Virus record (IMG/VR): IMGVR_UViG_3300035665_000001
Coordinates: 1 to 64,000 of that record
Direction: 5' to 3' (one strand)
DNA length: 64,000 bases
The number at the start of each line of letters is the position of its first letter. The stretch's first letter is position 1. Of the stretch, positions 5,522-20,749 are shown piece after piece. A program made the translations under genes and the position numbers. The notes under the pieces were generated by a model. It saw nothing but the letters and a program-made list of their open reading frames with translations, was not told where the DNA came from and did not search any database.

Positions 5522-8500
5522 TTAAACGTTTTTCTCCAAATAGTCCAACCAAAATTGAATAAGAAAGAAGTCATCATATTCGGCAATAGTTTTCGATTCA
5601 ACATACTGAATATAACTACTAATACAGACAATATCATCCTCAGATAAACATCTACCAAATGTTTCTTTCTCTAACGAAACTATATCAGAAATAAAAGTGG
5701 TATACGGTTTATCAGATTCAACTTTTTTAATCTCATAACCATAATGTAGTTCTAACTTTTTGTTAAGTAAAAATAAATCCATATCAATTTCATTATGCCA
5801 TTCATTAGTGGATAAATTTTGTTTTAATCTGTAATAAGTATCAGTCATAACAACACGGGTATCATCTGATAAAATTTGATAATTAACTATCAACTTTATT
5901 TTAAACAATAAGTTACGAAGATTTACAACCAATTTAATTAACATTTGACCATATTTTAATTTTTCATCAACATAACCTGTGACATCAAACAATTTTATCT
6001 CTTTCAATCTATCTTTAAAATGTTTAACATCCAATTGATTATAAGCATACGTAGCCGTCAATATTTCAAAAACAGTTTGTTGATCTTTATACAATTCAAT
6101 AAGCACACTTATATCAACGATATTCTGTTTAAAATCATATGCATGAACATCATTCATATATTCTGAAAAAGTCTTAGTCCCATTCAAATGGTTTTTATAC
6201 GCATTTAAAGTTGGGGTTATATCCATAAGCGGTAATTCAAAATTAATATCAAATGATTTTAATAAATTTTTGTTCAACGATGTTAATGCATACCGCTTAG
6301 ATTTTATATTATCCAACTCATAAAACAAATAGAAATTTTTATTTTCTGCTTCGAGGGTTTTTATTTCTGACATAACCAATTCATAGGATTCAACATCTAA
6401 ACCATCTAATACACCATACAACAAATTTATTCGTTCTAACCTAGTTATCAACATATTAAACATTTCCCGAACATTAGCTTTAAATACTAATGTAGGTACA
6501 GCCAAATTAGTAATCTCGGGTCTAAATTCATCTCGATCATATTGCCCCAATGAGGTATTCACAAAATAGCGAATATCAACATTATAAGTATATTTTCCTA
6601 AACCATTGCCAGATTCTGCACCTGTAACAACAGATGCAACAATATTTTTTATTTCGATAATACAATATCGATTTTTATTATTACGCAAAACCAATTTATC
6701 TCCAATAGTTACATTTATTTTTGTAAATGGAGTAGTATATTGTGCAGCATTATTAATATCATAAACACTTTTAACCGAACTTGGAACTTTCGTCATAAAA
6801 GTTATAAATTTACTGCCCGTTATATCCACAGTAGTATTACCAGATATAGGTACCGACAACCTAAAATCAAACAAAAATTCAGATGCTGGATCGGGATATG
6901 CAAATTTTGGATCAAATATTGTCGTATTATCAAACTCATGTCCCGGAAAACCAACACCATTATATCCAACAAAAACATATCCTAGTCTGTCAGCTAATAA
7001 TGTAGTATCCACTGTAGAAAAAGTAACAGCCCCTTTATCCAACATATCCTTTAACGCACCAGATAGATATAGAGGTCTAGTTACCAAAATTCCACTTTCT
7101 GGGTCAGCATATGTCATTTTTGGTACATCTGGGTTTAATTCTAATGGTGCGTAGTGAACATCTCCCATCTTTACAATTTGCGAATTTTTAGGTCCATCCA
7201 AATTAAAAGTTATATGACGTACAAATGCTTCACCAGTGGAGTAAGTAATTTCACATCTAACATCATATGTTCCAGCATCATAAAATGTATGTGCTACCTC
7301 ATTACCATCAAGAACCAATGTTTCTACAAACCATTTATATACTGCTTGTATTTCATTTCCGATAGCGTCAACAGTAGTTTCCATTTTTGCTTTTAATTCG
7401 ACAGTAAATGGGACATTACCAGTATATGAAATAGAATCGGTGTAATCTACTTTATCGGGAACTATAATATTATTATTGATGATAATATCAGTCCATTGCT
7501 TTCTATGTTTTTCAATCAACATATTTTTTTTATTTTCTAATTTTACAACTTCAACACAATTCTTAAATTTTCCAATAAGTTCCACAAAATTATAAAAATC
7601 ACATTTGATACTTTCATTATAATACTCAATATTACTAATAGTTTCGGTTGATAATTTAACGTTGTATTTAGTGTCCACCGAATACTCAACAATCATTTTT
7701 GTAATTTCTGATAATACCTGACTTTGTGTTAAGATTAACGCAGATATTCTACCTTTTTGACTAAACTTTACAACATTATCTTTATTTTTTAAATAAAATG
7801 GGTGAAGAATTAAAATACTGTGGTCCAATTTCTCATAGTCGTCCGTAACTCTCAAAATATTATGAAACCATCGAATGTAATTTATTCGCATCAACTGATT
7901 ATCAAAATATAATTTTTTTAAATTTTTTTCATTCAATAAAAATGCCTTTTCATTAGGTCTAGTTGAAATTATAAACTCATAAAGTATATCCAACTCGGCA
8001 AACAATTCACTTCTAACAACTTTATAAGTTTCATCATCAAATAAATCTGTTAAAATATCTACCGATTCAGAAAAACCGGTAGAAACTTTATCATGGGTTA
8101 TTTCATCCAAATATAATTTATCGATATTACCAATTTTAGTAAATATAGAATCAACCGAATCACTAAATTTTTCAAGTGCGTATAAAATATTAAAATCAAT
8201 TATATTTTCATTGTAAAAAGCGTTATATTCATTTAAAAATTGAATGTAACTTCCTTTATTATATAAATCGGTCAAAACATATGAAAACGCTTTAATTGGG
8301 GTATATATTTTAGTATCAATATATTCATTAAAACCAAAGAATACATTTTTCTTTGCAATAACTAATATAATTTCAACCTTGCTGACGTGCGATTTAAAAT
8401 CAATCAATTTATTCCGACACGATATTTTATTTTCATCGATACCCAAAAGTATATCATCTAGACGCTTACTTTTCAAATCTTCAAGATCAGCAGTTAATTT

Positions 8501-9952
8501 TTTTAAAAATAAAGTATAATCACGTTCTATCGATTCTGCGTATGTTGGTGGGGACAACTTATATGATGCAGTGAAAAATGTTAACGCTGCAGTTTTTAAC
8601 AATTCCTGAACTTTTACAACCTTTTGAACAAACGTATCAAATTCAAAATTATTAAGATGGTATGTTTCCTGCGTCAACAAATTATTATATCGAACAACCC
8701 CAAATTTATAATCGTTTCGTAAATCATCAATAGTAGAATCACCATAATTATCTATATCCAATTTTGAATATCGAAATATATTTGATGTCATCAAATTATA
8801 ATAATATTCCTTAACACTCAACAAAAACAGTTCAGTTTGATAAAATTCAAATGATAAGGTTACTGATTTGCCTGATTCGGAATATTTTTGGGTATAAACA
8901 ATTGGCTTTTTAACAACTTTAGTCATTTCAATTATATCCGAAACAATCTCCTTTAATGTCATATCAGTAATAATATAATCACAATCAACATTTATTTTAC
9001 CATCTTCAATCAATGTAATGTATGCTGAAAATCTATCAAGCATTTTATTGTATTCCGACTCAGTTTTATAATCAACATACATTTGATGTGATGCAATATC
9101 AGAAATAAATAATTTAACACGATTTGAAATAGATTCAAACGTATTTACTAAATTAGTAAACCTATAAACTCCTGATGAAACTATATTATTTTCATATGAT
9201 AATAAATTGTTTTTTATTTTTTCTACAATATCAAAATATTCGAAATTGGTTTGTTCAGGAGTTATCGCTATTGATTGTGATTTAACTTTATCAAATACGT
9301 CGGTATATTCATAAATTTTATTTTCAATCATTTTTTCGGTTGATACCATACTATGTAACTCAACTTTATTTTTATTGAGATACATAGTGTACAACCCATA
9401 CATATAATTGTAAACATCAGTAATGAACGTGCTCGATACATCGAAAATCTTTTTAGTTGGAACAGTTACTCGAAGAATATCATCAACATCATATGGATTA
9501 TTTGAAAAATAATAATATGGAGCAACTGTGTTATCACTATAAATTCTAGCATGTGTTAATACGTTTTGAATTTCATCAACCTCAACTTTTATCAACGGAG
9601 AGACAACAAGCATTTGTTCAAAACGATATAATGAATTAGTGAATGTTACTTTAGTATGAAGAATCTCTAATTCATATAAGTATGATCTAACTATTGCAGA
9701 TTCGATTTTATATTTTTCAAAAGTTACATTTAATGATTGTAATACTTTATCTATTTCACTATTTAATTCAGCAGTTACATCTATTTGTTTCAATACAAGT
9801 TCCAAATTGAATTTAAGAACATTATATTCATCAACAATTTTTTTATAATGAGTAATTTCAGTAGGTTGATCAATAAATTCATAAGTATTATGTGCTGATA
9901 GATTAAAATCCATAACAGCAACATATAATGAATTAAATTTAGTTCTAAACAT
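5522..9952 (-). CDS. Large helical/coiled-coil protein with a central PKD (Ig-like) domain
   Basis: 1476 aa. YTGNVPFTVEL...YKWF...HTFYDAGTYDVRCEITY fits the PKD pattern (~7200-7430). Confidence 0.7.
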   Translation of the reverse strand: MFRTKFNSLYVAVMDFNLSAHNTYEFIDQPTEITHYKKIVDEYNVLKFNLELVLKQIDVTAELNSEIDKVLQSLNVTFEKYKIESAIVRSYLYELEILHTKVTFTNSLYRFEQMLVVSPLIKVEVDEIQNVLTHARIYSDNTVAPYYYFSNNPYDVDDILRVTVPTKKIFDVSSTFITDVYNYMYGLYTMYLNKNKVELHSMVSTEKMIENKIYEYTDVFDKVKSQSIAITPEQTNFEYFDIVEKIKNNLLSYENNIVSSGVYRFTNLVNTFESISNRVKLFISDIASHQMYVDYKTESEYNKMLDRFSAYITLIEDGKINVDCDYIITDMTLKEIVSDIIEMTKVVKKPIVYTQKYSESGKSVTLSFEFYQTELFLLSVKEYYYNLMTSNIFRYSKLDIDNYGDSTIDDLRNDYKFGVVRYNNLLTQETYHLNNFEFDTFVQKVVKVQELLKTAALTFFTASYKLSPPTYAESIERDYTLFLKKLTADLEDLKSKRLDDILLGIDENKISCRNKLIDFKSHVSKVEIILVIAKKNVFFGFNEYIDTKIYTPIKAFSYVLTDLYNKGSYIQFLNEYNAFYNENIIDFNILYALEKFSDSVDSIFTKIGNIDKLYLDEITHDKVSTGFSESVDILTDLFDDETYKVVRSELFAELDILYEFIISTRPNEKAFLLNEKNLKKLYFDNQLMRINYIRWFHNILRVTDDYEKLDHSILILHPFYLKNKDNVVKFSQKGRISALILTQSQVLSEITKMIVEYSVDTKYNVKLSTETISNIEYYNESIKCDFYNFVELIGKFKNCVEVVKLENKKNMLIEKHRKQWTDIIINNNIIVPDKVDYTDSISYTGNVPFTVELKAKMETTVDAIGNEIQAVYKWFVETLVLDGNEVAHTFYDAGTYDVRCEITYSTGEAFVRHITFNLDGPKNSQIVKMGDVHYAPLELNPDVPKMTYADPESGILVTRPLYLSGALKDMLDKGAVTFSTVDTTLLADRLGYVFVGYNGVGFPGHEFDNTTIFDPKFAYPDPASEFLFDFRLSVPISGNTTVDITGSKFITFMTKVPSSVKSVYDINNAAQYTTPFTKINVTIGDKLVLRNNKNRYCIIEIKNIVASVVTGAESGNGLGKYTYNVDIRYFVNTSLGQYDRDEFRPEITNLAVPTLVFKANVREMFNMLITRLERINLLYGVLDGLDVESYELVMSEIKTLEAENKNFYLFYELDNIKSKRYALTSLNKNLLKSFDINFELPLMDITPTLNAYKNHLNGTKTFSEYMNDVHAYDFKQNIVDISVLIELYKDQQTVFEILTATYAYNQLDVKHFKDRLKEIKLFDVTGYVDEKLKYGQMLIKLVVNLRNLLFKIKLIVNYQILSDDTRVVMTDTYYRLKQNLSTNEWHNEIDMDLFLLNKKLELHYGYEIKKVESDKPYTTFISDIVSLEKETFGRCLSEDDIVCISSYIQYVESKTIAEYDDFFLIQFWLDYLEKNV

Positions 9953-12137
9953 ATTTTTTCTCCATATCTAACCATACCATATCTATTTTTTCCTGTTTTT
10001 TAATAAATTCTGCATTTCTTTTAAATTCCATATTTTTATTATGTGTGAATGCAACTATATTACTAAGTATGTTATTAAATGTTGTTATAACATCATCAAA
10101 ATTTTCCTGTCCACTTGAAATGGTAAATTTATGAGTAATAGTATAATCAAACAAATCAGAAACAACACTAATATCTTGATTTATATCAAACGCTATAGTA
10201 ACAACAGTTTTGAATATATCTTTAACATTTGTGAGTTTATTATCAATATCAAGAATCAAAGTTTCACTATATTGCTTATTCAATATATGACTGTGTATCA
10301 TTCCATATAGTAATTTTGTTTCAATAAGTAAATAGCGATTATACATTTCCAATCTACTAATATCAAATATCTTATCTGTAAATTCTCGATCCCACTCTTT
10401 TACCAAGTGTGTTTGAAGCATTGTCAATAATGATTTATAATACGACAACAACTTATTTCTATCATCTACCGAATACCATTCAACATCACATTCGTAATCT
10501 ACAAATTCCTGAAAATGAGTGTTTAATGTACCAACAAAATTTCCACGCAGTAAATTCACATATCCCATATCAGTAGAAGCATCAGGAATATATTTTTTAA
10601 AGAATGGTAATCGATTATCAAAATAATCCTTATACCGCAAAATATATGCAGTGATAGTATCATCCAAATCAATGATGGAGGCGGTTAACTTATTCAACTC
10701 AATTTCTAGAACCTTATTATCAATTTCATGTGCTTCCTTTAGTGTCATCAATTCATTATATTTTTTATCCAAATCATTTTTTTCATTGGTATAAAAATTT
10801 ATTTTTGCCAATACAGCACTGTTATCAACATTTGCATTGATGAAATTTTTATCAATTTCATTTATCGCTACATTTAATTGTCTATTAAGTTCAACACCTA
10901 ACTTGGAATAAATTTCAAATTCAGCAACTTTCTCCCAATAAGTTTCAGTTGCATATTTTTTAGCTACTATATCATACGTTTGCTGTAATTCATCTAACAT
11001 CGTATCAAAGGCATCAACTATATGTTGATCGATTTTACCTAAATGCAGATTAGTGTAAAGGTATTTTAATTTCTCTAAGGTTATCTCTCTATACTTAAAA
11101 TATTTTTTCTCATCATCGCTAGTTACTACCAGAAGCAACACTTTTTTCTTATCGATAATAAGTTGATCAACCTCAGCAATGTATTTTTTTAGTTCATCTA
11201 CTTTTTTACTGGTCATTTTAAATAAAAATTCATTATTATTAAAAGTTTTATGTGATTGTAACCATAATAATGAATACTCTTTTACTGCTAACTCAATCGA
11301 AAAATTGTATTTCTTTGTTAATGTTTCATACCATTTATCAACTAATAAATCATAGACCTGGGTTGATGAAGTTTCTTCTAAAGTTTTTTTACCAAACATA
11401 ATACTTGAACCGTATGTCCAGTATGTTTCATATTCATCTTTAAACTCTTCAACTAAATCCTGATAAAATACCTCCGTTCTTTTTTCCCATTCCTCATACA
11501 GCATTCGCAAAGTAACAGAAAAAAATGTATGTGGTAATAATTCAGTTTTTATTTTAGATAACTCAACAACATGATCTTGAATATTCTTCTCATAATGAAC
11601 AAAATCATCAGTCACTTTTACCATAATATCGTGTAATGTATTGATTTCTTGTGTAGTATCAATAACATAATTGTCATTATAAAAATAATTGTTTTCAACC
11701 ACCTGTGATTGATAATACCTAATAAAATCGGTTATTTTTTGAATATCATCAGTTAAAATACTCAAATTATGACTAATAAACTCATTATCATCCATAGACA
11801 ATTTACGTTTCAATATAATTTTTTCTTTGTTTGAAACCAACGAATTTTTATTAATGATTAGTTCATTATACTGTTGTAGTATTGGTAGCCCATAAGTATC
11901 AAAATCAATGATAAATTTTGACAAATCATACAATGTCGTATGGAGCTCACTGTCTAAACGTTGTGTAGAATTTTTATGGTCGTTAATCGACATCACAGTT
12001 GCCTCATCCAACCCATAATTTTTAATGAAATCTTCTGATAAATTTTGAAAATAACTGTCTATTTTTGAGTTATATGGATACCCACTTATAAATTCAAGAT
12101 TTTGTCGTACATCAATTCTAACCATTGTATTCCCCAA
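9945..12137 (-). CDS. Hypothetical coiled-coil protein
   Basis: 730-aa ORF overlapping the start of the next gene; heptad-rich with no recognised motif. Confidence 0.75.
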   Translation of the reverse strand: MGNTMVRIDVRQNLEFISGYPYNSKIDSYFQNLSEDFIKNYGLDEATVMSINDHKNSTQRLDSELHTTLYDLSKFIIDFDTYGLPILQQYNELIINKNSLVSNKEKIILKRKLSMDDNEFISHNLSILTDDIQKITDFIRYYQSQVVENNYFYNDNYVIDTTQEINTLHDIMVKVTDDFVHYEKNIQDHVVELSKIKTELLPHTFFSVTLRMLYEEWEKRTEVFYQDLVEEFKDEYETYWTYGSSIMFGKKTLEETSSTQVYDLLVDKWYETLTKKYNFSIELAVKEYSLLWLQSHKTFNNNEFLFKMTSKKVDELKKYIAEVDQLIIDKKKVLLLVVTSDDEKKYFKYREITLEKLKYLYTNLHLGKIDQHIVDAFDTMLDELQQTYDIVAKKYATETYWEKVAEFEIYSKLGVELNRQLNVAINEIDKNFINANVDNSAVLAKINFYTNEKNDLDKKYNELMTLKEAHEIDNKVLEIELNKLTASIIDLDDTITAYILRYKDYFDNRLPFFKKYIPDASTDMGYVNLLRGNFVGTLNTHFQEFVDYECDVEWYSVDDRNKLLSYYKSLLTMLQTHLVKEWDREFTDKIFDISRLEMYNRYLLIETKLLYGMIHSHILNKQYSETLILDIDNKLTNVKDIFKTVVTIAFDINQDISVVSDLFDYTITHKFTISSGQENFDDVITTFNNILSNIVAFTHNKNMEFKRNAEFIKKQEKIDMVWLDMEKKYV

Positions 12138-13153: not shown

Positions 13154-13475
13154 CACACATAAAATTTCTATATACCCAATAATCAGTGTTATCTATGATG
13201 GTGAAGTACAAGCAGAATACGAGTTTAAAGATGATGGTCAAGTTATCGAAATACAAGTATGTCTTCGCCCAGATGAAGGTGTAGTTAGTGATAAATTTGT
13301 CCAGTCGTTTATGAACGATATTAAATTTGATGAATTGGGTCCACTAAGAGATAAGGCATTTGAAAAATTCAAAGGAGAAAAATTCTTAGTCGACCCAGAA
13401 AAACTAACTAAAGAAAAGGTACAAATAAAATCATCAAAAGGTTGGGAATACGCAGAAGAAGAAAAAAAAGATTAA
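13125..13475 (+). CDS. Hypothetical protein, possible internal head protein
   Basis: Starts MKLKYLIES (LxE leader motif). Confidence 0.7.
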   Translation: MKLKYLIESYTHKISIYPIISVIYDGEVQAEYEFKDDGQVIEIQVCLRPDEGVVSDKFVQSFMNDIKFDELGPLRDKAFEKFKGEKFLVDPEKLTKEKVQIKSSKGWEYAEEEKKD

Positions 13476-13482
13476 AACTACA

Positions 13483-14307
13483 TTATAAAACATTTTCTAG
13501 ATCTGGTCTTTCCTCTGCAGTGGGTAGAGTGATGTTCAATACAACATATAATACACCATCACTCAAACCCTTCTTAACACGCATTTTTTGACCATGTTTT
13601 GTATTTTGTGGAACTTTAATTTTGAAAACATCACCAAAAAAATTAATTTCTTTTTGCCCACCAAAAATTGCAGTTTTTAAATCAATAGTTTCCATAATAA
13701 AAATATCATTATTTTCAATAGTCATATTGTTTGGTGGTGTTATTTTAATAGTGATGTAAACATTACCAACGCGACCATTCATACTTCTTCCTTTACCTGA
13801 AACCCGCATTTTTGTACCATTCTTGATTCCAGCTGGAATAGTCAATTTTATATTTTCACCATTGATTTCAGTCGTAATATAATCACCATTAACTGCTGTT
13901 TCTAATGGGATAGCAACATCAACATGTATATCTAAATTGGCCTGTGGTCTAGGTGTTTCAAATGGTGAACCGCCACCAAAACTAAATGAACTACCACCAG
14001 CTCCACCACCAAACATATTTCTAAGCATTTCATCAATATCCATACCAGATGATCTATGATATTGATGAAAACCTTGTCCAGTGCCCTTGTTAAACATAGA
14101 ATCGCCACGCATATCATACTGAGATTTTTTCTCAGCATTGCCTAACACTTCATATGCGGCAGCAATTTCTTTAAATTTTTCCTCAGCATCTGGACTTTTA
14201 TTTCTATCGGGGTGATACTTATTCGCTAATTTTCTATAAGATTTTTTTATTTCATCAGCACTTGCATTTTCACTAACACCGAGAATACTATATAAACTTT
14301 TAGCCAT
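13483..14307 (-). CDS. cbpA: J-domain co-chaperone, CbpA/type II DnaJ
   Basis: J domain with HPD (KYHPDRN), G/F-rich linker, DnaJ C-terminal domain, no zinc finger. Confidence 0.9.
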
Positions 14308-14309
14308 AA

Positions 14310-14786
14310 TTATTTTCCTTGAATAATAACCATTGCAGCACGTAATAATCTGCCGTTTAAAATGTAACCTTTTCTAAGTACCTCTACGATTGAATTATCA
14401 TCCAACCCATTATCAACTTTCGCAATTGCTTCATGAAAATTAGGATCAAATTTTTCAGTATTAATTTCCTCAACACCATGTTTTTTCAAAGTATTAAGTA
14501 AACCCTTATAAAGTAATCCAACACCAACCCTAACATCATCTGGCATATCAACTTTCAATGAATTCTCAAAATTGTCCAAGGTTTCGAGCAAATCTTTTGA
14601 AAATCGTTCATTAGAAAATCTAACAGCATCTTCTTTTTCACGTTGTAATCGATTTTTAAAATTTTGAGAATCGGATAGTGCTCGATAATATTTGTCTTTA
14701 TATTCATTTACTTCATTGGTTAACTTTTCAAAAGTTTCGGGTGTATTTTCTAATACATCATCTTCATTCATCATATTTGTTCTCAC
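14310..14786 (-). CDS. grpE: Nucleotide exchange factor GrpE
   Basis: FDPNFHEAI...[18 protein letters not shown] GrpE signature; lies between dnaK and the J protein. Confidence 0.95.
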
Positions 14787-14797
14787 AGTTTGAAATT

Positions 14798-14821
14798 GGG
14801 GACAAAACTTAATTTGTCCCC
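14798..14821 (-). terminator. Stem-loop between dnaK and grpE (attenuator or stabiliser)
   Basis: GGGGACAAA-N6-TTTGTCCCC inverted repeat with a weak U tail. Confidence 0.5.
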
Positions 14822-14834
14822 ATAAAATTAAAAT

Positions 14835-16124
14835 TTAGTGTTCAATTTCCGCCTCAAGAAAATCATCATCTGGCATAGATGCTGAATAGGTTTGATTATC
14901 CTGATTTTGCGATGCCTCATGCAACTTCGTACCAATTTCCTGGAACTTATTCATCAAAGTTTCATGAATTTTTTTAAGATCGGAAACAGTTGATGTTTCG
15001 TTACCTACCAATTCCTTTGCAGAATCAATAACAGATTTTAATTCGGCTGTATCTAAGGCTTCATTTTCCTTAATAAACTTTTCTGCCTGATTAATCGTAC
15101 CATCAATTGAGTTTGTAATACTAATTTTTTCAAGCTTATCTTTATTTCGAATGTTTGATTCCTCCGCATCTGCAACCATTTTAGAAATTTCATCATCAGT
15201 TAACGTACCACTACCAGTAATAGTGATTGAATTAGCTTTCCCCGTAGATAAATCTTTTGCAGAAACAGAAAGAATACCATTGGTATCAATATCCATCTTA
15301 ATTTCAATTTGAGGAACACCTCGTGGTGCAGGAGCAATTCCACCCAATTCAAATGTTCCTAACTGCTTATTATCAGAAAATAACTGTGCCTCTCCAGTAG
15401 CAATCATGACAGATACCGCAGGTTGGTTATCAGCCGCCGTTGAAAACACCTGTTTTGCAGATGTAGGAATAGTTGTACCTTTTTCAACCAGTTTAGTCAT
15501 CACACCACCCATAGTTTCAATTCCTAAAGATAATGGTGTGACGTCCAATAAAACAATATCATCAACATCACCTGCTAATACACCTCCTTGAATAGCAGCA
15601 CCTGCAGCAACCACTTCATCGGGGTTGACAGTATTATTCAAGATTTTACCATTAAAAAACTCAGAAACTTTTGTTTTTACTAATGGAATACGAGTTGAAC
15701 CACCAACCATTACAACTTCCTGGATTTTTGATTTATCTAACCCAGCCTGTTTCAAAGCATCTTTGATATGGGTGAGAATTTCATCAACCATTGGTTCAAT
15801 CATAGAATCTAATTTAGCTCTAGTCACTTTCGAAATCAAATGTTTTGGACCTGAAGCATCAGCAGTAATGTATGGTAAATTAATTTCAGTTTCCATAGTT
15901 GCAGAAAGTTCTTTTTTTGCTTTTTCAGCAGAATCCATTAAACGTTGCATAGCAAGTGCATCATTAGATAAATCCATACCAGTATCAGATTTAAATTGAG
16001 AAATTAAGTATCCCATAATCGCCTGGTCTACGTCCTTACCACCCATAAAAGCATTACCATCGGTTGATAAAACTTCAAATGTTCCTTCTTCACCAACATC
16101 AATAACTGAAATATCTAATGTTCC
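14835..16124 (-). CDS. dnaK: DnaK (Hsp70), exon 2
   Basis: GTLDISV...VVMVGGSTRIP...NPDEVVAAGAAIQG...LLDVTPLSLGIET...PAPRGVPQIE. 429 aa after the splice junction. Confidence 0.95.
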   Translation of the reverse strand, partial: GTLDISVIDVGEEGTFEVLSTDGNAFMGGKDVDQAIMGYLISQFKSDTGMDLSNDALAMQRLMDSAEKAKKELSATMETEINLPYITADASGPKHLISKVTRAKLDSMIEPMVDEILTHIKDALKQAGLDKSKIQEVVMVGGSTRIPLVKTKVSEFFNGKILNNTVNPDEVVAAGAAIQGGVLAGDVDDIVLLDVTPLSLGIETMGGVMTKLVEKGTTIPTSAKQVFSTAADNQPAVSVMIATGEAQLFSDNKQLGTFELGGIAPAPRGVPQIEIKMDIDTNGILSVSAKDLSTGKANSITITGSGTLTDDEISKMVADAEESNIRNKDKLEKISITNSIDGTINQAEKFIKENEALDTAELKSVIDSAKELVGNETSTVSDLKKIHETLMNKFQEIGTKLHEASQNQDNQTYSASMPDDDFLEAEIEH

Positions 16125-16457
16125 CGATTTGTTATCGTAGGGGAATTTAACCCCCACTTCTAATAGTTTCCTATTAGTCCAGACTATATCTTAGTTTGTT
16201 AATTTTCAAACCTTCCGCACTCTTGGAGTTTTACCTTCTTCAGCATTATCTGGTCAGAATCCATACTCTAGTCGTTGAACCTTGAACTTATTTCTAAGTC
16301 CCTTGGCTGCTGATTTTCCAATCTTAACCCTTTTCAAACCATTATCCCTATCTTCACAGATTTGATTGTGGTGTGTTAAGCTCTAAGGACGTCCCAGCAA
16401 TTCACGGAATTTTTTTAAACTGGAGGCTTGTTATGCTGCTACTGCAGCCAATAGTTC
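16125..16457 (-). ncRNA. Group I self-splicing intron (333 nt, no ORF) in dnaK
   Basis: Exon ends in U (GGT GGT|) and intron ends in G (..AAATCG|GGA ACA). Core elements in order: GAATTGCTGGGA (P), AATCAGCAGCC (Q), GTTCAACGACTAGA (R), AAGATATAGTCT (S). Removal restores DFGG-GTLD. Confidence 0.92.
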
Positions 16458-17048
16458 ACCACCAAAATCCACAACACAAATGGTTTCATCTTTTTTCTTA
16501 TCAATACCATACGCTAATGCTGCTGCAGTAGGTTCGTTAATAATACGTAACACATTAAGACCGGCAATTTTACCAGCATCCTGTGTTGCTTTACGTTGTG
16601 AATCATTAAAGTAAGCAGGAACAGTAATAACTGCATCAGTAACAGTTGTACCTAAATATGCCTCAGCATCCACTTTTAATTTTGAAAGAATCTTAGCAGA
16701 AATCTCTTGAGGCGTGTAAGTCTTACCATCAATCTCAACAGCGGCAGCACCATTTCTATCTACAATGTTGTATTGTACTTTAGTTTTTGCTTCCTCAGTT
16801 TTTTTCTCATTACTCATTAAACCCATAATACGTTTAACAGCTTCAATTGTTTTATGGGGGTTTGTTACTGCCTGACGTTTTGCAGACTCACCAACCAAAA
16901 CTTCATCACCTGCAAAAGCCACAATTGATGGAGTAGTATTATTACCCTCACGATTTGGGATAATTTTTGACGTTCCATTTTCATAAATGGAAATACAACT
17001 ATTAGTGGTTCCTAAATCTAAACCAAGCACAATTTGTTTTTTACTCAT
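16458..17048 (-). CDS. dnaK: DnaK (Hsp70), exon 1
   Basis: [54 protein letters not shown]. 197 aa; spliced product 626 aa. Confidence 0.95.
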
Positions 17049-17074
17049 AATATTTTCCTCATTAAGCTAAATTA

Positions 17075-17872
17075 TTAATTAATGTATTTTTTTTCAATAA
17101 TTGGTTTGAAAAATTGTATCCAACTTTCTCTATTCCAATTGGTTTTCGAATGACAGCTATTACATAACACTATCAAATTTTTTTCATCTGAGTTTTGTTT
17201 ATTATAATCTATATGATGAATGTGTAGTTTTGATGTAATTTCAAAACGGTTACACAGTTGGCATTGTAAATTATCACGAACCTTTATCAGATATTTCTTT
17301 TGCTTATTAAAGCCTACATCGTATTCACCAAAACTTAAACCACCTTGCCAATTATGATGATATTGTAGTTTTGGTGTATTCTGGTTTTGTTTTAAAAACC
17401 CAGTATCATCATAAGATCTTTTACCTTTCCTTGAATCAGAAGCCCATTGCTTATATTCATCGGTATGTTCTTTACCAAAAAAAGGATTTTTTTCACCAAT
17501 TCTCGGATTATCTTTCAAATACATTTTCAATGAATTTGAAATTTTACTCGATACCATAGGATCACATGATGGATTGTTTTTTCCAGAAAAACGGTCTGAC
17601 ATAGTTTTTCTTAATTCAGCAGCTCTATCACGTCCAATTCGATCTTCCCAACTGATTGTTTTTTGCCAATTAATTTGACATTTTTTAGAACAATATCGCC
17701 TTTTTTCAGATCCAACCCTTAATAATCCTTTTCGTGGTCCAGTTTTAACAATTTTTAATTGTATCACCACACCACAAAATTCACAGTTTTTAATATCAAA
17801 TAATTTATGGTCCATATAACATTTCCTAAAATGTATATTACTATACATTATTTTAATGAACATATGATCCAT
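17075..17872 (-). CDS. Free-standing HNH homing endonuclease with NUMOD3-like DNA-binding motifs
   Basis: GEKNPFFGKEHT (NUMOD3-like); CQLC...LHIHHIDYNKQNSDEKNLIVLCNSCHSKT (HNH). Confidence 0.85.
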   Translation of the reverse strand: MDHMFIKIMYSNIHFRKCYMDHKLFDIKNCEFCGVVIQLKIVKTGPRKGLLRVGSEKRRYCSKKCQINWQKTISWEDRIGRDRAAELRKTMSDRFSGKNNPSCDPMVSSKISNSLKMYLKDNPRIGEKNPFFGKEHTDEYKQWASDSRKGKRSYDDTGFLKQNQNTPKLQYHHNWQGGLSFGEYDVGFNKQKKYLIKVRDNLQCQLCNRFEITSKLHIHHIDYNKQNSDEKNLIVLCNSCHSKTNWNRESWIQFFKPIIEKKYIN

Positions 17873-17897
17873 TTATACCACTGTTTTTAATATCCAG

Positions 17898-18395
17898 TTA
17901 AATAAAATTTTCGGGATATTTGTCAATAACATCGGATACTATGTTATACGGCAATATTTCACCAAATCGCAACTGTATTGATCGATATTCCAAAATATCA
18001 AAAAAATCGTTATACTTGATAAAATTATTAGTTAAGTATATGGCAATTAATAAATTTTTATTTGAATATTTACCTTTTAAAAAATGAAAATCATCATTCC
18101 TGGATCGAATAACATCAACTACTGAATAGTAAATAATTGATAATTCTTCTGGAAACTGTTTAGGTCCTCCAAATCTATCCTTTAACAATATATCACTTTC
18201 AATATCATAAATTACATCCGAACGCATAGTTAAATTGCGATTTGATAATTTTGTTTCACGCACATTTGGTTTATAAACTTTAAAAATAAGATAATCGCCA
18301 AATTTTATATTTGGAATATCACCATAGTCAAATGTATCACCAAATTGCTGTCTTACAGCAAAAATTGCCAATGACATTGATAATCCTCTCTTCAA
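17898..18395 (-). CDS. Hypothetical protein
   Basis: ORF track; start uncertain; ends KYPENFI. Confidence 0.65.
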   Translation of the reverse strand: MKRGLSMSLAIFAVRQQFGDTFDYGDIPNIKFGDYLIFKVYKPNVRETKLSNRNLTMRSDVIYDIESDILLKDRFGGPKQFPEELSIIYYSVVDVIRSRNDDFHFLKGKYSNKNLLIAIYLTNNFIKYNDFFDILEYRSIQLRFGEILPYNIVSDVIDKYPENFI

Positions 18396-18415
18396 AAAAA
18401 AATTATACCAAAATT

Positions 18416-18835
18416 TTATTTAATTGGAATGTAATGAATCTCTTTTTCTTTTATAGTTGGAGTTACAACAACTCTTAATATACCATCAATAATTTCTGCA
18501 TCAATTTTATCAACTGGAAACATTAAACTATAGGCAACATCAAAATTTCTTTTTGCAATATCACGTTTGATATATTCTCGACCATCATCAATATTTTCAT
18601 CGGATTTTGAACCCATAATTCGCAATGAATCTTCGGACAATTCAATTTTGATATCTTCTTTTGAAAACCCAGCAACTGCAATTTCTAAATGGGCAATGCC
18701 ATCTTTAGTATAAACGTCGGTCAATGGATATTTACTGACTGCTTTAGTATTAGTAAACACCTGTCCAAAAAACTCATTGACAGCATCTTCTAAAACAGCA
18801 TTAGCGGGGTAAAAATGTATATTTCTTGTTCTCAT
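18416..18835 (-). CDS. Small heat-shock protein (Hsp20/IbpA-like)
   Basis: YPLTDV...LEIAVAGFSKEDIKIEL...YIKRDIAKRNF...AEIIDGILRV alpha-crystallin domain; ATG 18835 is 7 nt after AGGAG. Confidence 0.92.
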   Translation of the reverse strand: MRTRNIHFYPANAVLEDAVNEFFGQVFTNTKAVSKYPLTDVYTKDGIAHLEIAVAGFSKEDIKIELSEDSLRIMGSKSDENIDDGREYIKRDIAKRNFDVAYSLMFPVDKIDAEIIDGILRVVVTPTIKEKEIHYIPIK

Positions 18836-18841
18836 AATCAA

Positions 18842-18860
18842 ACTCCTTGGTTAAGCAAAT
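18842..18860 (-). promoter_or_regulatory. ROSE-like RNA thermometer hairpin over the hsp20 SD
   Basis: AUUUGCUU-AACC-AAGGAGU: the U(U/C)GCU motif pairs with the SD with a bulged G. Confidence 0.6.
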
Positions 18861-19465
18861 TTATTTTATAATTTTTGTGCAATTCACAAAAATTTTGAAT
18901 TTTTGAGAGGAATATTATTTTTTTAGTAGATTGTCTCAATCTTTACAATTGAGAAACTTTAGACATTTCGTTACGAAAAATGATTTTATGTAATCCAAAA
19001 TAAAATAAACACCATAATAGTCGATTATTATATTTTTATTTTTAACAATAACAAAATTTGTCTATTGTACACAATACAGAACTTAAAAAAATTAACATTC
19101 TTATTTTAAATGAACTAACACAAACCTAAAGATTGGTGTCCACCAATGCTCGTTTCCAAGACTTACAAGGATTAAGATTGATCTTTATGATAACTAAAAA
19201 AATCAATCATGGTCTTTAGTTCAATAGACCATCAATTAAAAATCATAATTACTAATTTGTTAAAATTATACAATGAATTTTTAAGAAAATAAATCATTTT
19301 CAAAAATTATTTAATAATTACCTATACAATAATGTAATTTAGGTTAAACAAATTAATATCCCTTTTTAAATATTATACTATATCAAGGGGTGATTTACAT
19401 TCTATTTTTATTTATATCGGTAATTTTTTTCATTACCCTATCATTTTAAAAAAATTATACAATAA

Positions 19466-19495
19466 ATTTTGGGAAATTTTAAAATTTCCCAAAAT
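19466..19495. terminator. Perfect palindrome downstream of the acidic repeat gene
   Basis: ATTTTGGGAAATTTTAAAATTTCCCAAAAT is self-complementary. Confidence 0.55.
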
Positions 19496-19514
19496 AATTT
19501 TAAAAATTTGTTTT

Positions 19515-20176: not shown

Positions 20177-20749
20177 TTATTGTTTAAAAATAATACATGA
20201 CCAAACGTAAGTATCTCGATCCGATCCATGCAATATCTCAGGTTTATCAGACAATTTTAATATTGTGTTTCTTGGTAACAAATATTCACTTTCATCCCTC
20301 TCAAGGGACTTTTTGGAAATATTAGATGCAAATTGTCCTTTTTTTGCATTAATTTCGAGAATATGTGCGGATTCTGCTTTTGATACACCATGTGTATCAA
20401 ATACATCCTTTCTAGCGGCTTGTCTATCTGCAAATTTTTGTGCAATCCCGTATTTCGTAGATGTTGACATATACGCAGGTATATGCATAGTATCATCACC
20501 AGACATAGTTGTTCTAGGATCATGTCGAATACCCGAATATAACGTGATATTTTTTGGTAATTTTTTTGATACTATTTTGTCAAGTGTAGGTATATGATGA
20601 ACGTCCACAAATTCGGGTATTTCGGTTCCATTTGCATGATGCTTATACAATTCTCTAGAAAGTGGTCGAGATAAATCAGTATAATGCCTTATTTGATCCA
20701 CAACAGTAATTTTTTTAGCTTCATACAACAACATATCAATTAATCGCAT
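20177..20749 (-). CDS. ADP-ribosyltransferase (Alt/VIP2-like)
   Basis: TLYSG...AYMSTS...HILEI...DESEYLLPRN (STS and ExE motifs). Confidence 0.85.
   Translation of the reverse strand: MRLIDMLLYEAKKITVVDQIRHYTDLSRPLSRELYKHHANGTEIPEFVDVHHIPTLDKIVSKKLPKNITLYSGIRHDPRTTMSGDDTMHIPAYMSTSTKYGIAQKFADRQAARKDVFDTHGVSKAESAHILEINAKKGQFASNISKKSLERDESEYLLPRNTILKLSDKPEILHGSDRDTYVWSCIIFKQ

What the first reader, a model, noticed from the sequence alone, without database searches (positions are those of the whole stretch)
13483..18835. Phage-encoded complete Hsp70 system (DnaK, GrpE, CbpA/DnaJ) plus Hsp20
Seen: hsp20, dnaK, grpE and a J-protein gene, co-oriented within 5.4 kb with intact motifs, embedded among phage genes. 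Known: phages commonly carry Hsp20 or GroES-like genes, while a full KJE set is uncommon. The intron and adjacent HNH gene argue that it is resident in the phage rather than a host contig chimera.
Basis: partly seen in the sequence, partly recalled or inferred. Interest (0 to 1): 0.6.

Follow-up and report, generated by a model that had tools for sequence, protein, structure and literature searches.

The report
Phage Hsp70 chaperone cassette with intron
A 306-kb freshwater T4-like phage carries its own compact heat-shock chaperone set (small Hsp, DnaK, GrpE and a J-protein), captured long ago from Campylobacterota-like bacteria, and its dnaK gene is split by a mobile self-splicing intron; this is a real and tidy example of a rare but already documented kind of phage cargo.

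Summary
On the minus strand of 13483-18841 lie hsp20, a conserved 159-aa unknown gene, a free-standing HNH endonuclease gene, dnaK (two exons split by a 333-nt ORF-less group I intron at DFGG|GT), grpE and a zinc-finger-less class-B J-protein gene. All motifs are intact.

The cassette belongs to the phage:
- The window holds T4-type tail and recombination genes.
- Depth is even across the cassette.
- The same cassette in the same backbone recurs in several independent metagenome assemblies.

The DnaK and GrpE of this lineage each form one clade, placed beside Campylobacterota proteins, with Arcobacteraceae nearest for DnaK. The gene order differs from the bacterial hrcA-grpE-dnaK operon.

Complete K/J/E sets are rare in phages but not unique. 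Lak megaphages, a >630-kb huge phage and an unrelated 385-kb IMG/VR phage also hold all three genes, though scattered.

The extra finding concerns the intron. The same ribozyme core, 91-94% identical while the flanking exons are only 61-77% identical, sits in relatives at two different dnaK sites. Both sites follow GGTGGT, and a compensating change occurs in the putative guide sequence. The intron occurs with or without a GIY-YIG gene.

The role of the cassette in infection is inferred, not shown.

The parts
18416..18835 (-). hsp20: small heat-shock protein, 139 aa from the ATG at 18835, with an alpha-crystallin domain and a C-terminal IPI motif
   Evidence: Pfam PF00011 5.6e-11; PHROG 432, Hsp20, 2e-19; the only Hsp20 in the genome; 47-75% identical in the syntenic relatives.
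17898..18377 (-). Conserved lineage-specific gene of unknown function (159 aa from Met7 of the 165-aa ORF), lying between hsp20 and dnaK
   Evidence: No Pfam or PHROG hit. Only 26 representatives among 1.84 billion proteins, all 157-177 aa apart from a few shorter partial entries (67-119 aa). The AlphaFold model is confident (pLDDT 91.7, pTM 0.86) but has no clear PDB match (Foldseek E>0.2; VIA Z<=4.7). Present at the same place in L003, L085, L088 and L093 and absent from L091.
17075..17872 (-). Free-standing HNH endonuclease gene (265 aa, NUMOD3 plus HNH), ending 27 nt before the dnaK start
   Evidence: Pfam NUMOD3 7.9e-7 and HNH 1.1e-5; 17 PHROG HNH families. It is 62% identical to an HNH gene at the same place in L091, a 48-aa remnant survives in L088, and it is absent from the intronless L085 and L003.
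16458..17048 (-). dnaK exon 1 (197 aa, first part of the nucleotide-binding domain, ending DFGG)
   Evidence: Pfam HSP70 positions 1-195, 6e-84; residue 197 abuts exon-2 residue 1 in 80 uninterrupted viral homologues and in L085.
16125..16457 (-). Group I intron, 333 nt, without an ORF; the frame is closed by a TAA 8 codons into the intron
   Evidence: RF00028 at 63.8 bits, E 9.5e-16. The 5' exon ends in T and the intron ends in G. A homologous core is found in L091, L093, L088 and L178. The intron is present in the DNA of an independent sample, in a contig covering 16062-16394 with 0 differences.
14835..16124 (-). dnaK exon 2 (429 aa plus stop: rest of the nucleotide-binding domain, linker, substrate-binding domain and lid)
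   Evidence: Pfam HSP70 positions 191-597, 3.5e-130; 57-71% identical to the phage-clade DnaKs and 55-58% to Campylobacterota DnaK.
14310..14774 (-). grpE: nucleotide exchange factor, 154 aa, lacking the N-terminal tail of E. coli GrpE
   Evidence: Pfam PF01025 5.8e-42. It aligns to PDB 4ANI residues 70-211 and 1DKG residues 55-192. It keeps all columns that are invariant across 25 diverse GrpEs. It belongs to a clade of short (150-156 aa) GrpEs.
13483..14307 (-). Class-B (CbpA/DnaJ2-like) J-protein, 274 aa: J-domain with HPD, G/F region and C-terminal domains, no zinc finger
   Evidence: Pfam DnaJ and DnaJ_C. The best PDB match is Thermus DnaJ2, 6PSI, 2.5e-37. HPD is present in 21 of 21 clade members and CxxCxGxG in none. 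The only J-domain in the genome.
18842..19514 (-). Long intergenic leader upstream of hsp20, with candidate regulatory elements
   Evidence: A terminator-like hairpin at 19495-19466. The window's only two ATTGTATAAT (extended -10-like) sites are at 19454-19463 and 19265-19274; the count is not above chance. An inverted repeat and an AATTTGCTTAA box lie just before the ribosome-binding site, and both recur in relatives. No CIRCE or HAIR element. Function untested.

Best explanation
This is a phage-resident, self-contained Hsp70 chaperone cassette: hsp20, a 159-aa gene of unknown function, dnaK, grpE and a class-B J-protein gene. An ancestor of this freshwater T4-like jumbo-phage lineage acquired it from Campylobacterota-like bacteria, and it has been kept under purifying selection.

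Inferred mechanism:
1. The dnaK transcript must first self-splice its group I intron, which restores the DxGGGT phosphate-2 motif.
2. The J-protein delivers clients and triggers ATP hydrolysis through its HPD motif.
3. The phage's own short GrpE reopens the nucleotide-binding domain.
4. Hsp20 holds unfolding proteins for hand-over to DnaK.

The most likely use is folding and assembly of the phage's many and very large proteins in a cell whose own chaperone supply is limiting or shut off.

The intron and the neighbouring HNH gene are selfish passengers, not parts of the chaperone machine.
For: Shown:
- Domain content and intact catalytic and interaction motifs.
- Phage context: gp15, gp46/SbcC-like, gp5 and tail sheath genes, in a 306-kb virus record.
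- Even depth and zero-difference contigs in the likely source run and in an independent lake sample.
- The same cassette in the same backbone in L085-87, L088-90, L091-92 and the P0272 contigs.
- DnaK: a phage clade of 32 rows (SH-aLRT 96), sister to Arcobacteraceae (95), inside Campylobacterota (100).
- GrpE: a phage clade of 25 rows (100), beside Campylobacterota GrpE (87).
- All named top hits of the J-protein are Campylobacterota.
- Motifs are conserved throughout the clade, and GrpE keeps the universally invariant columns.
- A model of a relative's uninterrupted DnaK nucleotide-binding domain with two copies of its own GrpE passed the test. The score was 0.75 against a best control of 0.53. 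That mark was reached by 51 of 78 solved complexes and by 2 of 108 mismatched pairs. The runs agree in at least 88% of contacts and the partner's pLDDT is at least 84. Contacts fall on subdomains IB and IIB. This may partly reflect memory of 1DKG.
- Zero-difference contigs from an RNA library lie on dnaK exon 2, the intron, the HNH gene and the boundary between the unknown gene and hsp20.

Inferred: splicing in vivo, cognate pairing in this very phage, and the client range.
Against: - No spliced junction was seen in the RNA contigs, and RNA libraries can contain DNA, so neither transcription nor splicing is demonstrated.
- The closest IMG/VR relative, L003, keeps hsp20, the unknown gene and dnaK but has no grpE or J-protein gene in that place, nor a GrpE or J-domain match in its 88-kb record. 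The co-chaperones are therefore dispensable for some relatives, which could use host GrpE and DnaJ.
- The Hsp70 system could equally serve regulation or counter-defence.
- The host is unknown.
- The trees are quick-search trees, with taxon sampling limited to top hits plus a truncated genome scan.
Confidence: 0.65

Rival explanations
1. The cassette acts mainly on the host rather than on phage proteins. The phage J-protein and DnaK would capture host heat-shock regulators (HspR, HrcA or sigma-32-type circuits) or chaperone-dependent defence sensors and antitoxins, reprogramming the stress response or blocking abortive infection.
For: - A phage J-protein, RB43 Rki, is reported to bind host DnaK and stabilise sigma-32 (Perrody 2012, cited in PMC12619734).
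- The same paper proposes counter-defence roles for jumbo-phage DnaK and DnaJ, and cites DnaJ-dependent sensing by bNACHT25.
- The J-protein here is the CbpA type, whose nearest named relatives are Campylobacterota CbpA-like proteins.
- L003 keeps dnaK without its own co-chaperones.
Against: A regulator decoy needs only a J-domain or a DnaK. Keeping a matched exchange factor, a full class-B client-binding C-terminal domain and an sHsp across the lineage points to a working folding cycle. No CIRCE or HAIR operators were found in the window.
Confidence: 0.2
2. The chaperones remodel the phage replication or packaging machinery, as host DnaK, DnaJ and GrpE do for lambda O/P-DnaB, rather than serving general folding.
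For: There is an established precedent that lambda replication needs DnaK, DnaJ and GrpE (references listed in PMC9038755 and PMC5454422). The cassette lies among non-structural genes.
Against: The T4-type replication genes known to me do not need Hsp70. Hsp20 has no place in such a role. Nothing in the neighbourhood is a recognisable initiator or helicase loader.
Confidence: 0.08
3. Assembly chimera or host contamination: the chaperone genes belong to a co-assembled bacterium and were joined to a phage contig.
For: - The GC content of 14-18 kb is 33-34% against 26-30% in the flanks.
- Logan contigs break inside dnaK at 16605-16623.
- Several GenBank 'phage' records with grpE-dnaK look like host fragments.
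Against: - Depth is equal on both sides, 11.6 and 11.8. The break sits in the most conserved dnaK stretch, where other organisms' reads pile up.
- The cassette lies between the same phage genes in five or more independent assemblies.
- The phage copies are monophyletic and at most 58% identical to any named bacterial protein.
- The gene order dnaK-grpE-J differs from hrcA-grpE-dnaK in Campylobacterota.
Confidence: 0.02
4. Decaying cargo: dnaK is inactivated by the insertion and the cassette is on its way out.
For: The reading frame is closed 8 codons into the intron, and no spliced RNA was seen.
Against: - The insert is a full-length group I ribozyme above Rfam's threshold, inserted exactly between codons with canonical U and G boundaries.
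- Both exons keep every motif.
- Relatives with the same intron also keep intact exons.
Confidence: 0.05

Closest known systems
Bacterial DnaK-DnaJ/CbpA-GrpE system with IbpA/B-type sHsps, in particular the Campylobacterota hrcA-grpE-dnaK operon and CbpA-like J-proteins
   Same: It has the same four protein families, the same motifs and the same predicted DnaK:GrpE2 interface. The nearest cellular relatives are Campylobacterota.
   Different: - It is encoded by a virus.
- The gene order is dnaK-grpE-J with hsp20 upstream, and there is no hrcA, CIRCE or HAIR.
- GrpE is shortened to about 154 aa, without the N-terminal tail.
- An extra lineage-specific gene lies inside the cassette.
- dnaK carries a group I intron.
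Jumbo 'moraphages' encoding DnaK, DnaJ and HSP20 (Arch Virol 2025, PMC12619734)
   Same: These are large aquatic, mostly freshwater, phages with DnaK, J-proteins and Hsp20 acquired from the presumed host phylum.
   Different: In those phages DnaK derives from Flavobacteriales and GrpE is not mentioned (0 occurrences). Here the source is Campylobacterota-like, GrpE is present, and the genes form one cassette.
Lak megaphages, the >630-kb huge phages (LR756502, LR756504, LR745206) and the 385-kb IMG/VR record G004
   Same: These phage genomes hold DnaK and GrpE. For Lak-A1, LR756502 and G004 a J-protein was also found.
   Different: - The genes are scattered. In Lak-A1, grpE lies about 130 kb from dnaK and dnaJ. 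In LR756502 and G004, the grpE-J pair lies 7-10 kb from dnaK.
- The G004 DnaK is only 50% identical to the window's and groups with Bacteroidetes-like sequences, which points to an independent acquisition.
- The main text of the huge-phage paper does not discuss them.
Single phage-borne co-chaperones: RB43 Rki (J-domain protein) and roseophage R5C grpE
   Same: They are phage genes that plug into an Hsp70 cycle.
   Different: They are single co-chaperones that must use the host DnaK. Here all partners are supplied by the phage.
Phage group I introns and their homing endonucleases: T4 td, nrdB and sunY; cyanophage S-PM2 psbA intron with the free-standing F-CphI; Aeh1 nrdA with mobE (recalled from my own knowledge, not retrieved)
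   Same: The intron sits in the most conserved motif of a conserved gene. Relatives carry a GIY-YIG gene in a peripheral loop, and an ORF-less intron lies beside a free-standing HNH gene.
   Different: The host gene is dnaK; my literature search found no paper describing a group I intron in dnaK. The same core occupies two sites 29 codons apart in related phages.

Membership tests
Hsp70/DnaK | Full actin-like nucleotide-binding domain with phosphate-1, phosphate-2 and adenosine motifs, a hydrophobic linker and a substrate-binding domain | tested here: met
   The two exons cover HSP70 profile positions 1-597 of 599. DLGTT, KR..G, NEPTAA, GGSTRIP, LLDV and IETMGG are present, and DFGG|GT is completed across the splice junction. 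The exons were analysed separately and were not joined.
Hsp70/DnaK | ATPase activity stimulated by a J-protein, and client refolding | not testable with these tools
   This needs purified protein.
GrpE nucleotide exchange factor | Long-helix dimer, four-helix bundle and beta-domain that bind DnaK subdomains IB and IIB | tested here: met
   PF01025 5.8e-42. It aligns to 4ANI and 1DKG over the helix, bundle and beta-domain, and all invariant columns are kept. For the homologous pair from relative L085 the complex model scored 0.75 against a best control of 0.53, a mark reached by 51 of 78 solved complexes and 2 of 108 mismatched pairs, with contacts at nucleotide-binding-domain residues 51-62 and 252-293. 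This shows likeness, not binding.
GrpE nucleotide exchange factor | N-terminal unstructured tail that interacts with the DnaK substrate-binding domain (E. coli residues 1-33) | tested here: not met
   The alignment starts near E. coli residue 55, 25 residues into the window's GrpE. The whole phage clade is 150-156 aa, against 175-235 aa for bacterial hits. This is a variant feature, not a family-defining one.
Class B J-domain protein (CbpA / DnaJ2 type) | J-domain with HPD, a G/F-rich region and two C-terminal client-binding domains, with no zinc-finger domain | tested here: met
   PF00226 and PF01556. HPD is present and there are no CxxCxGxG repeats. The best structural relative by sequence is Thermus DnaJ2, 6PSI.
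Class B J-domain protein (CbpA / DnaJ2 type) | Curved-DNA binding, and regulation by CbpM or interplay with HspR | not tested
   No neighbouring cbpM or hspR homologue was recognised. DNA binding cannot be assessed from these data.
Small heat-shock protein (Hsp20 / alpha-crystallin) | Alpha-crystallin domain and a C-terminal I-x-I anchoring motif | tested here: met
   PF00011 5.6e-11. The C-end reads ...YIPIK.
Group I intron | Conserved catalytic core (P3-P8) matched by a covariance model, U before the 5' splice site and G as the last intron base | tested here: met
   RF00028 at 63.8 bits against a gathering score of 50, over the full model 1-253. The boundaries are ...GGT|G...CG|GGA.
Group I intron | Self-splicing, or a spliced mRNA in vivo | tested here: inconclusive
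   RNA-library contigs cover exon 2 and the intron, but none bridges the exon-exon junction.
Mobile intron with homing endonuclease | Endonuclease ORF inside the intron | tested here: not met
   The window's intron has no ORF. Homologous introns in L091, L088, L178 and L093 carry related GIY-YIG genes in the P8 loop.
Collaborative homing (ORF-less intron plus free-standing endonuclease) | A free-standing endonuclease next to the intron-bearing gene that cuts the intronless allele at or near the insertion site | not testable with these tools
   Only the anatomy fits. An intact HNH/NUMOD3 gene ends 27 nt upstream of dnaK. HNH, intact or as a remnant, is seen in 3 of 4 intron-bearing relatives and in 0 of 2 intronless ones. 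Cleavage specificity is unknown.

The most novel reading that the evidence does not exclude
Two linked readings remain open.

(a) The cassette may be an autonomous five-part phage chaperone machine. The conserved 159-aa protein, which has no recognisable fold relative, would be a lineage-specific co-chaperone or client adaptor for Hsp20 and DnaK.

(b) The dnaK intron may be a natural case of group I intron transposition to a new site through guide-sequence pairing, that is, reverse splicing. The same core sits after GGUGGU at two sites, and a compensating A-to-U change in the putative guide sequence matches the U-to-A difference at exon position -7.
Probability: 0.2. Interest if true: 0.75.

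Novelty: new member of a known kind. Interest (0 to 1): 0.5.

Why it matters
- It gives a clean test case for why large phages carry their own proteostasis genes. All partners sit in one 5.4-kb block that can be cloned, expressed and tested together, and natural variants allow comparison: L003 lacks grpE and J, and L091 lacks the unknown gene.
- Phage Hsp70 systems have arisen more than once, from different host phyla: Campylobacterota-like here, Bacteroidota-like elsewhere.
- The cassette points to a host phylum for an uncultured freshwater jumbo-phage lineage.
- The dnaK intron shows several states among related phages. These are intronless, ORF-less at site 1, with a GIY-YIG gene at site 1 or at site 2, and with or without a free-standing HNH gene. 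This makes a compact natural series for studying intron and endonuclease gain, loss and site change.

Tried and rejected
- The whole-window Rfam scan at gathering threshold found nothing. The intron appeared only when the sub-window or the genome tool was used, so the blank was a filter effect.
- No tRNA genes were found in the window.
- Scans of IMG/VR found no relatives of this GrpE, either with the single protein or with the phage-clade alignment A3. A broad GrpE alignment had no stretch conserved enough to search with.
I used it only as an outgroup set, not to name the nearest taxon.
- CIRCE and HAIR operator searches found no sites. The sigma-70-like promoter count was not above shuffles.
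- Rfam found nothing in the hsp20 leader.
- The 159-aa protein had no Pfam, PHROG or Atlas feature hit and no convincing fold match.
- No GroEL or GroES family gene was found in the genome.
- Searching the intron core in viral contigs found nothing. In metagenome contigs it found one more site-2 copy.
- One assemblies look-up failed and was repeated.
- The P0272 contigs gave gene calls but no DNA.
- The minimum-free-energy fold of the intron is not a reliable group I model, and I did not use it for P1.
- Joining the two dnaK exons into one protein was deliberately left out. All searches, trees and motif checks were done exon by exon. The complex model used the naturally uninterrupted DnaK of relative L085.

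Full report
**1. What is there**

The span 13483-18841 carries seven co-oriented minus-strand ORFs. Pfam identifies them as follows:
- A J-protein at 13483-14307 (DnaJ 7.7e-27, DnaJ_C 4.9e-23).
- GrpE at 14310-14786 (5.8e-42).
- Two Hsp70 pieces: 14835-16157 matches profile positions 191-597, and 16431-17048 matches positions 1-195.
- An HNH/NUMOD3 endonuclease at 17075-17872.
- An ORF without any family at 17898-18395.
- Hsp20 at 18416-18841.

The translations show these features:
- HPD and a G/F-rich stretch in the J-protein, with no zinc finger.
- DLGTT, KR..G, NEPTAA, GGSTRIP, the LLDV linker and IETMGG in DnaK.
- IPI at the C-end of Hsp20.

One search confirms the motifs.

**2. The intron**

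The roughly 330 bases between the two Hsp70 pieces match Rfam's group I intron model over its full length. The score is 63.8 bits against a gathering score of 50, E 9.5e-16. It is the only such match in the 306-kb genome. A whole-window scan at default filters had missed it.

Exon 1 ends ...GAT TTT GGT GGT and exon 2 begins GGA ACA TTA GAT. The intron is therefore 16125-16457, 333 nt. A U precedes the 5' splice site and a G is the last intron base. Splicing restores the phosphate-2 motif D-F-G-G-G-T.

In all 80 best DnaK loci of IMG/VR the gene is uninterrupted, and exon-1 residue 197 abuts exon-2 residue 1. This fixes the junction independently.

Every search, alignment and tree used one exon by reference.

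**3. Is it the phage's own?**

The window is the first 64 kb of a 306,333-bp IMG/VR virus record, which CheckV estimates as 85% complete. It encodes a T4 gp15-type sheath stabiliser, a gp46/SbcC-like nuclease subunit, a gp5-type hub and a tail sheath. The nearest isolates are only 23-26% identical in the sheath.

The stretch occurs in lake and freshwater metagenomes from 23 studies. Laying contigs on it gave the following:
- In the likely source run, two contigs of 15.8 and 51.4 kb cover 13400-16623 and 16605-18900 with no differences, at depths of 11.6 and 11.8.
- They meet inside the most conserved dnaK stretch, where reads of other organisms pile up (bin depth 57).
- An independent 2024 lake sample gives zero-difference pieces over the J-protein gene, grpE, dnaK, the 3' intron boundary (16062-16394), the HNH gene, the unknown gene and hsp20.

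The cassette also recurs, between the same backbone genes, in independent assemblies:
- L085-87 (NCBI metagenome, 155.6-kb contig): hsp20, a 165-aa gene, uninterrupted dnaK (623 aa), grpE, J, then the 724-aa and 1476-aa genes that also follow in the window.
- L088-90 (ENA, 71 kb), L091-92 (JGI and Logan) and the P0272 contigs: the same order.

No bacterial protein comes close. Named DnaK hits reach 55-58% identity, GrpE at most 46% and the J-protein at most 51%. The chimera hypothesis is rejected.

**4. Origin**

In a DnaK tree of the exon-2 region (103 rows) the phage copies form one clade of 32 rows (SH-aLRT 96). That clade is sister to Arcobacteraceae (95) and lies inside a Campylobacterota clade (100). 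Other DnaK-bearing IMG/VR contigs fall in several unrelated places.

In a GrpE tree the phage copies form a clade of 25 rows (100) beside the Campylobacterota GrpEs taken from L175 and L176 (87, unstarred). All named top hits of the J-protein are Campylobacterota CbpA-like proteins.

Campylobacterota order these genes hrcA-grpE-dnaK, whereas the phage has dnaK-grpE-J. The cassette is therefore not a simple operon capture. The low GC content (about 29%) fits an Arcobacteraceae-like host, but the host is inferred, not shown.

**5. How complete sets compare with other phages**

- IMG/VR: none of the 80 best DnaK loci has a GrpE within 6 kb (tblastn; phmmer with three GrpE queries). Three have a J-protein and about 35 have an Hsp20 just downstream.
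- L003: the nearest IMG/VR relative shares the backbone, hsp20, the unknown gene and dnaK, but has about 1 kb of other sequence in place of grpE and J. It has no GrpE or J-domain match in its 88-kb record.
- GenBank: 38 of 50,697 phage records have a GrpE match. The credible ones are 15 Lak megaphages and three huge phages (>630 kb). Most of the rest look like host fragments.
- Lak-A1: a J-protein gene next to dnaK, with grpE 130 kb away.
- LR756502: grpE and J are adjacent and dnaK lies 10 kb away.
- G004: an unrelated 385-kb IMG/VR phage has grpE and J adjacent and dnaK 7 kb away. Its DnaK is only 50% identical to the window's and looks Bacteroidetes-like.

In the literature I could search:
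- Moraphages are described with DnaK, DnaJ and HSP20 but without mention of GrpE (PMC12619734).
- Roseophage R5C is described with grpE alone (PMC5454422).
- The main text of the huge-phage paper does not mention these genes.

A full set is therefore rare and hardly discussed, but it is not new. What is particular here is the compact, conserved single cassette and its source phylum.

**6. Likely working**

GrpE aligns to the solved Geobacillus and E. coli proteins from about E. coli residue 55 to the end. It keeps every column that is invariant in 25 diverse GrpEs. The whole phage clade is short, at 150-156 aa, and so lacks the N-terminal tail.

The J-protein resembles Thermus DnaJ2 over its whole length.

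A complex model used the uninterrupted DnaK nucleotide-binding domain of relative L085 with two copies of its own GrpE:
- It scored 0.75 against a best control of 0.53.
- That mark was reached by 51 of 78 solved complexes and by 2 of 108 mismatched pairs.
- The runs agree in at least 88% of contacts, and the partner's pLDDT is at least 84.
- Contacts fall on subdomains IB and IIB.
- This shows likeness to the known complex and may come from memory.

The genome has a single J-domain and a single Hsp20, and no GroEL or GroES family gene.

RNA-library contigs with no differences lie on dnaK exon 2, the intron, the HNH gene and the boundary between the unknown gene and hsp20. No exon-exon joint was seen, and such libraries can hold DNA.

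I therefore take the folding-machine reading as most likely (0.65). Host-regulation or counter-defence use is the main rival.

**7. The intron as a mobile element**

The same ribozyme is present in relatives:

| Locus | Site in dnaK | Intron length | ORF inside |
|---|---|---|---|
| L091/92 | same as window (DFGG\|GT) | 1294 nt | GIY-YIG, 274 aa |
| L093 | same as window | 1422 nt | 310 aa |
| L088-90, L178 | 29 codons downstream (NAFLGG\|DDFD) | 1235 nt | GIY-YIG, 272 aa |

The three intron ORFs are homologous (56% and 37% identity). They sit in the P8 loop, where the window's intron has only a short hairpin.

An RNA contig from the lake metatranscriptome also shows a relative of the intron with 1244 extra bases at that loop.

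The core is 91-94.5% identical to the window's. The flanking 300 nt of exon are only 61-77% identical. This argues for recent lateral spread.

Both insertion sites follow GGTGGT, in occupied and in empty alleles alike. A candidate guide sequence GCCUCC lies at intron bases 31-36 and would pair with GGUGGU, with one U-U mismatch. The next base is A where exon position -7 is U (window, L091, L093), and U where it is A (L088, L178). This single compensating change rests on two lineages and is a lead, not proof.

L085 and L003 are intronless. Gene calls on the P0272 contigs (230 aa, a 514-nt gap, then 413 aa, with no ORF between) suggest an ORF-less copy at the second site, but no DNA was available.

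**8. The HNH gene**

The window's HNH gene ends 27 nt before dnaK. A 62%-identical HNH gene sits at the same place in L091, where it replaces the unknown gene. L088 keeps a 48-aa remnant there. L085, L003 and L093 have none.

An ORF-less intron beside a free-standing endonuclease recalls collaborative homing as described for cyanophage psbA (from my own knowledge). Cleavage specificity is untested.

**9. The unknown gene**

The 159-aa product has only 26 representatives among 1.84 billion proteins, all of similar length apart from a few shorter partial entries. Its conserved blocks are KNRYG, AIYLTDT, EYQL.RYKYGKE.P and a C-terminal YPEKLI.

The model is confident (pLDDT 91.7). It shows a beta-alpha-beta N-domain and a helical C-domain. 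Neither Foldseek (best E 0.23) nor VIA-align (best Z 4.7) gave a convincing match.

Its fixed place between hsp20 and dnaK suggests a link to the chaperones. Its absence from L091 shows that it is dispensable.

**10. Verdict**

This is a new member of a known kind, a phage-borne Hsp70 system, with a well-documented mobile intron as a bonus. Interest is moderate.

Noticed in passing
window 17898-18377 (-): A conserved 159-aa protein between hsp20 and dnaK. It is restricted to this phage lineage (26 representatives in 1.84 billion proteins). It is confidently modelled (pLDDT 91.7) but has no recognisable fold relative. Its C-terminus is a conserved YPEKLI.
   Followed up: yes
L088:7526-8760, L178, L091:4856-6149, L093:1885-3306: The window's intron core recurs in relatives at two different dnaK sites, both after GGTGGT. 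A GIY-YIG gene sits in the P8 loop, and a compensating change occurs next to the putative guide sequence. The core is far more conserved than the exons.
   Followed up: yes
L088:6625-6768: A 48-aa remnant of the HNH gene (73% identical to the window's C-terminus) lies between the unknown gene and dnaK. It is a decayed copy of the free-standing endonuclease.
   Followed up: partly
window 18842-19514 (-), with L085, L088, L091 and L093 upstream of hsp20: In every relative an inverted repeat of differing sequence sits about 25-45 nt before the hsp20 start. It is followed by a conserved AATTTGCTTAA-like box and the ribosome-binding site. The window's only two ATTGTATAAT sites also lie in this leader. 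This may be a 5' RNA structure or an operator.
   Followed up: partly
window 1110-3140 and 3413-5032 (-): Two neighbouring AAA+-type ATPase genes (PHROG 1297; PF00004 3.9e-8; a weak HslU-like P-loop match) lie 8-12 kb downstream of the cassette on the same strand. In L085 they appear fused as one gene of about 1100 aa. No link to disaggregation has been shown.
   Followed up: partly
window 5522-9952 and 9945-12137 (-): Two large genes (1476 and 730 aa) without any Pfam or PHROG match follow the cassette in every relative. Whether they are clients is pure speculation.
   Followed up: no
window 20177-20749 (-): A 190-aa product with weak matches to Alt-like RNA polymerase ADP-ribosyltransferases (PHROG 802, E 2.5e-4).
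   Followed up: no
window 55749-63407 (+): A 2552-aa ORF in the structural region. It was not examined.
   Followed up: no
GenBank phage records OR847154, OR848384, OR844995, CAKLQH020000026 and others: Several records named as phages carry adjacent grpE and dnaK at bacterial-like identity, on short contigs. They look like host fragments rather than phage genes.
   Followed up: no
window 1-64000: The Rfam gathering-threshold scan of the whole window returned nothing. The same model scored 63.8 bits (above gathering) when 800 bases or the genome tool were used, so whole-window blanks can hide introns.
   Followed up: yes
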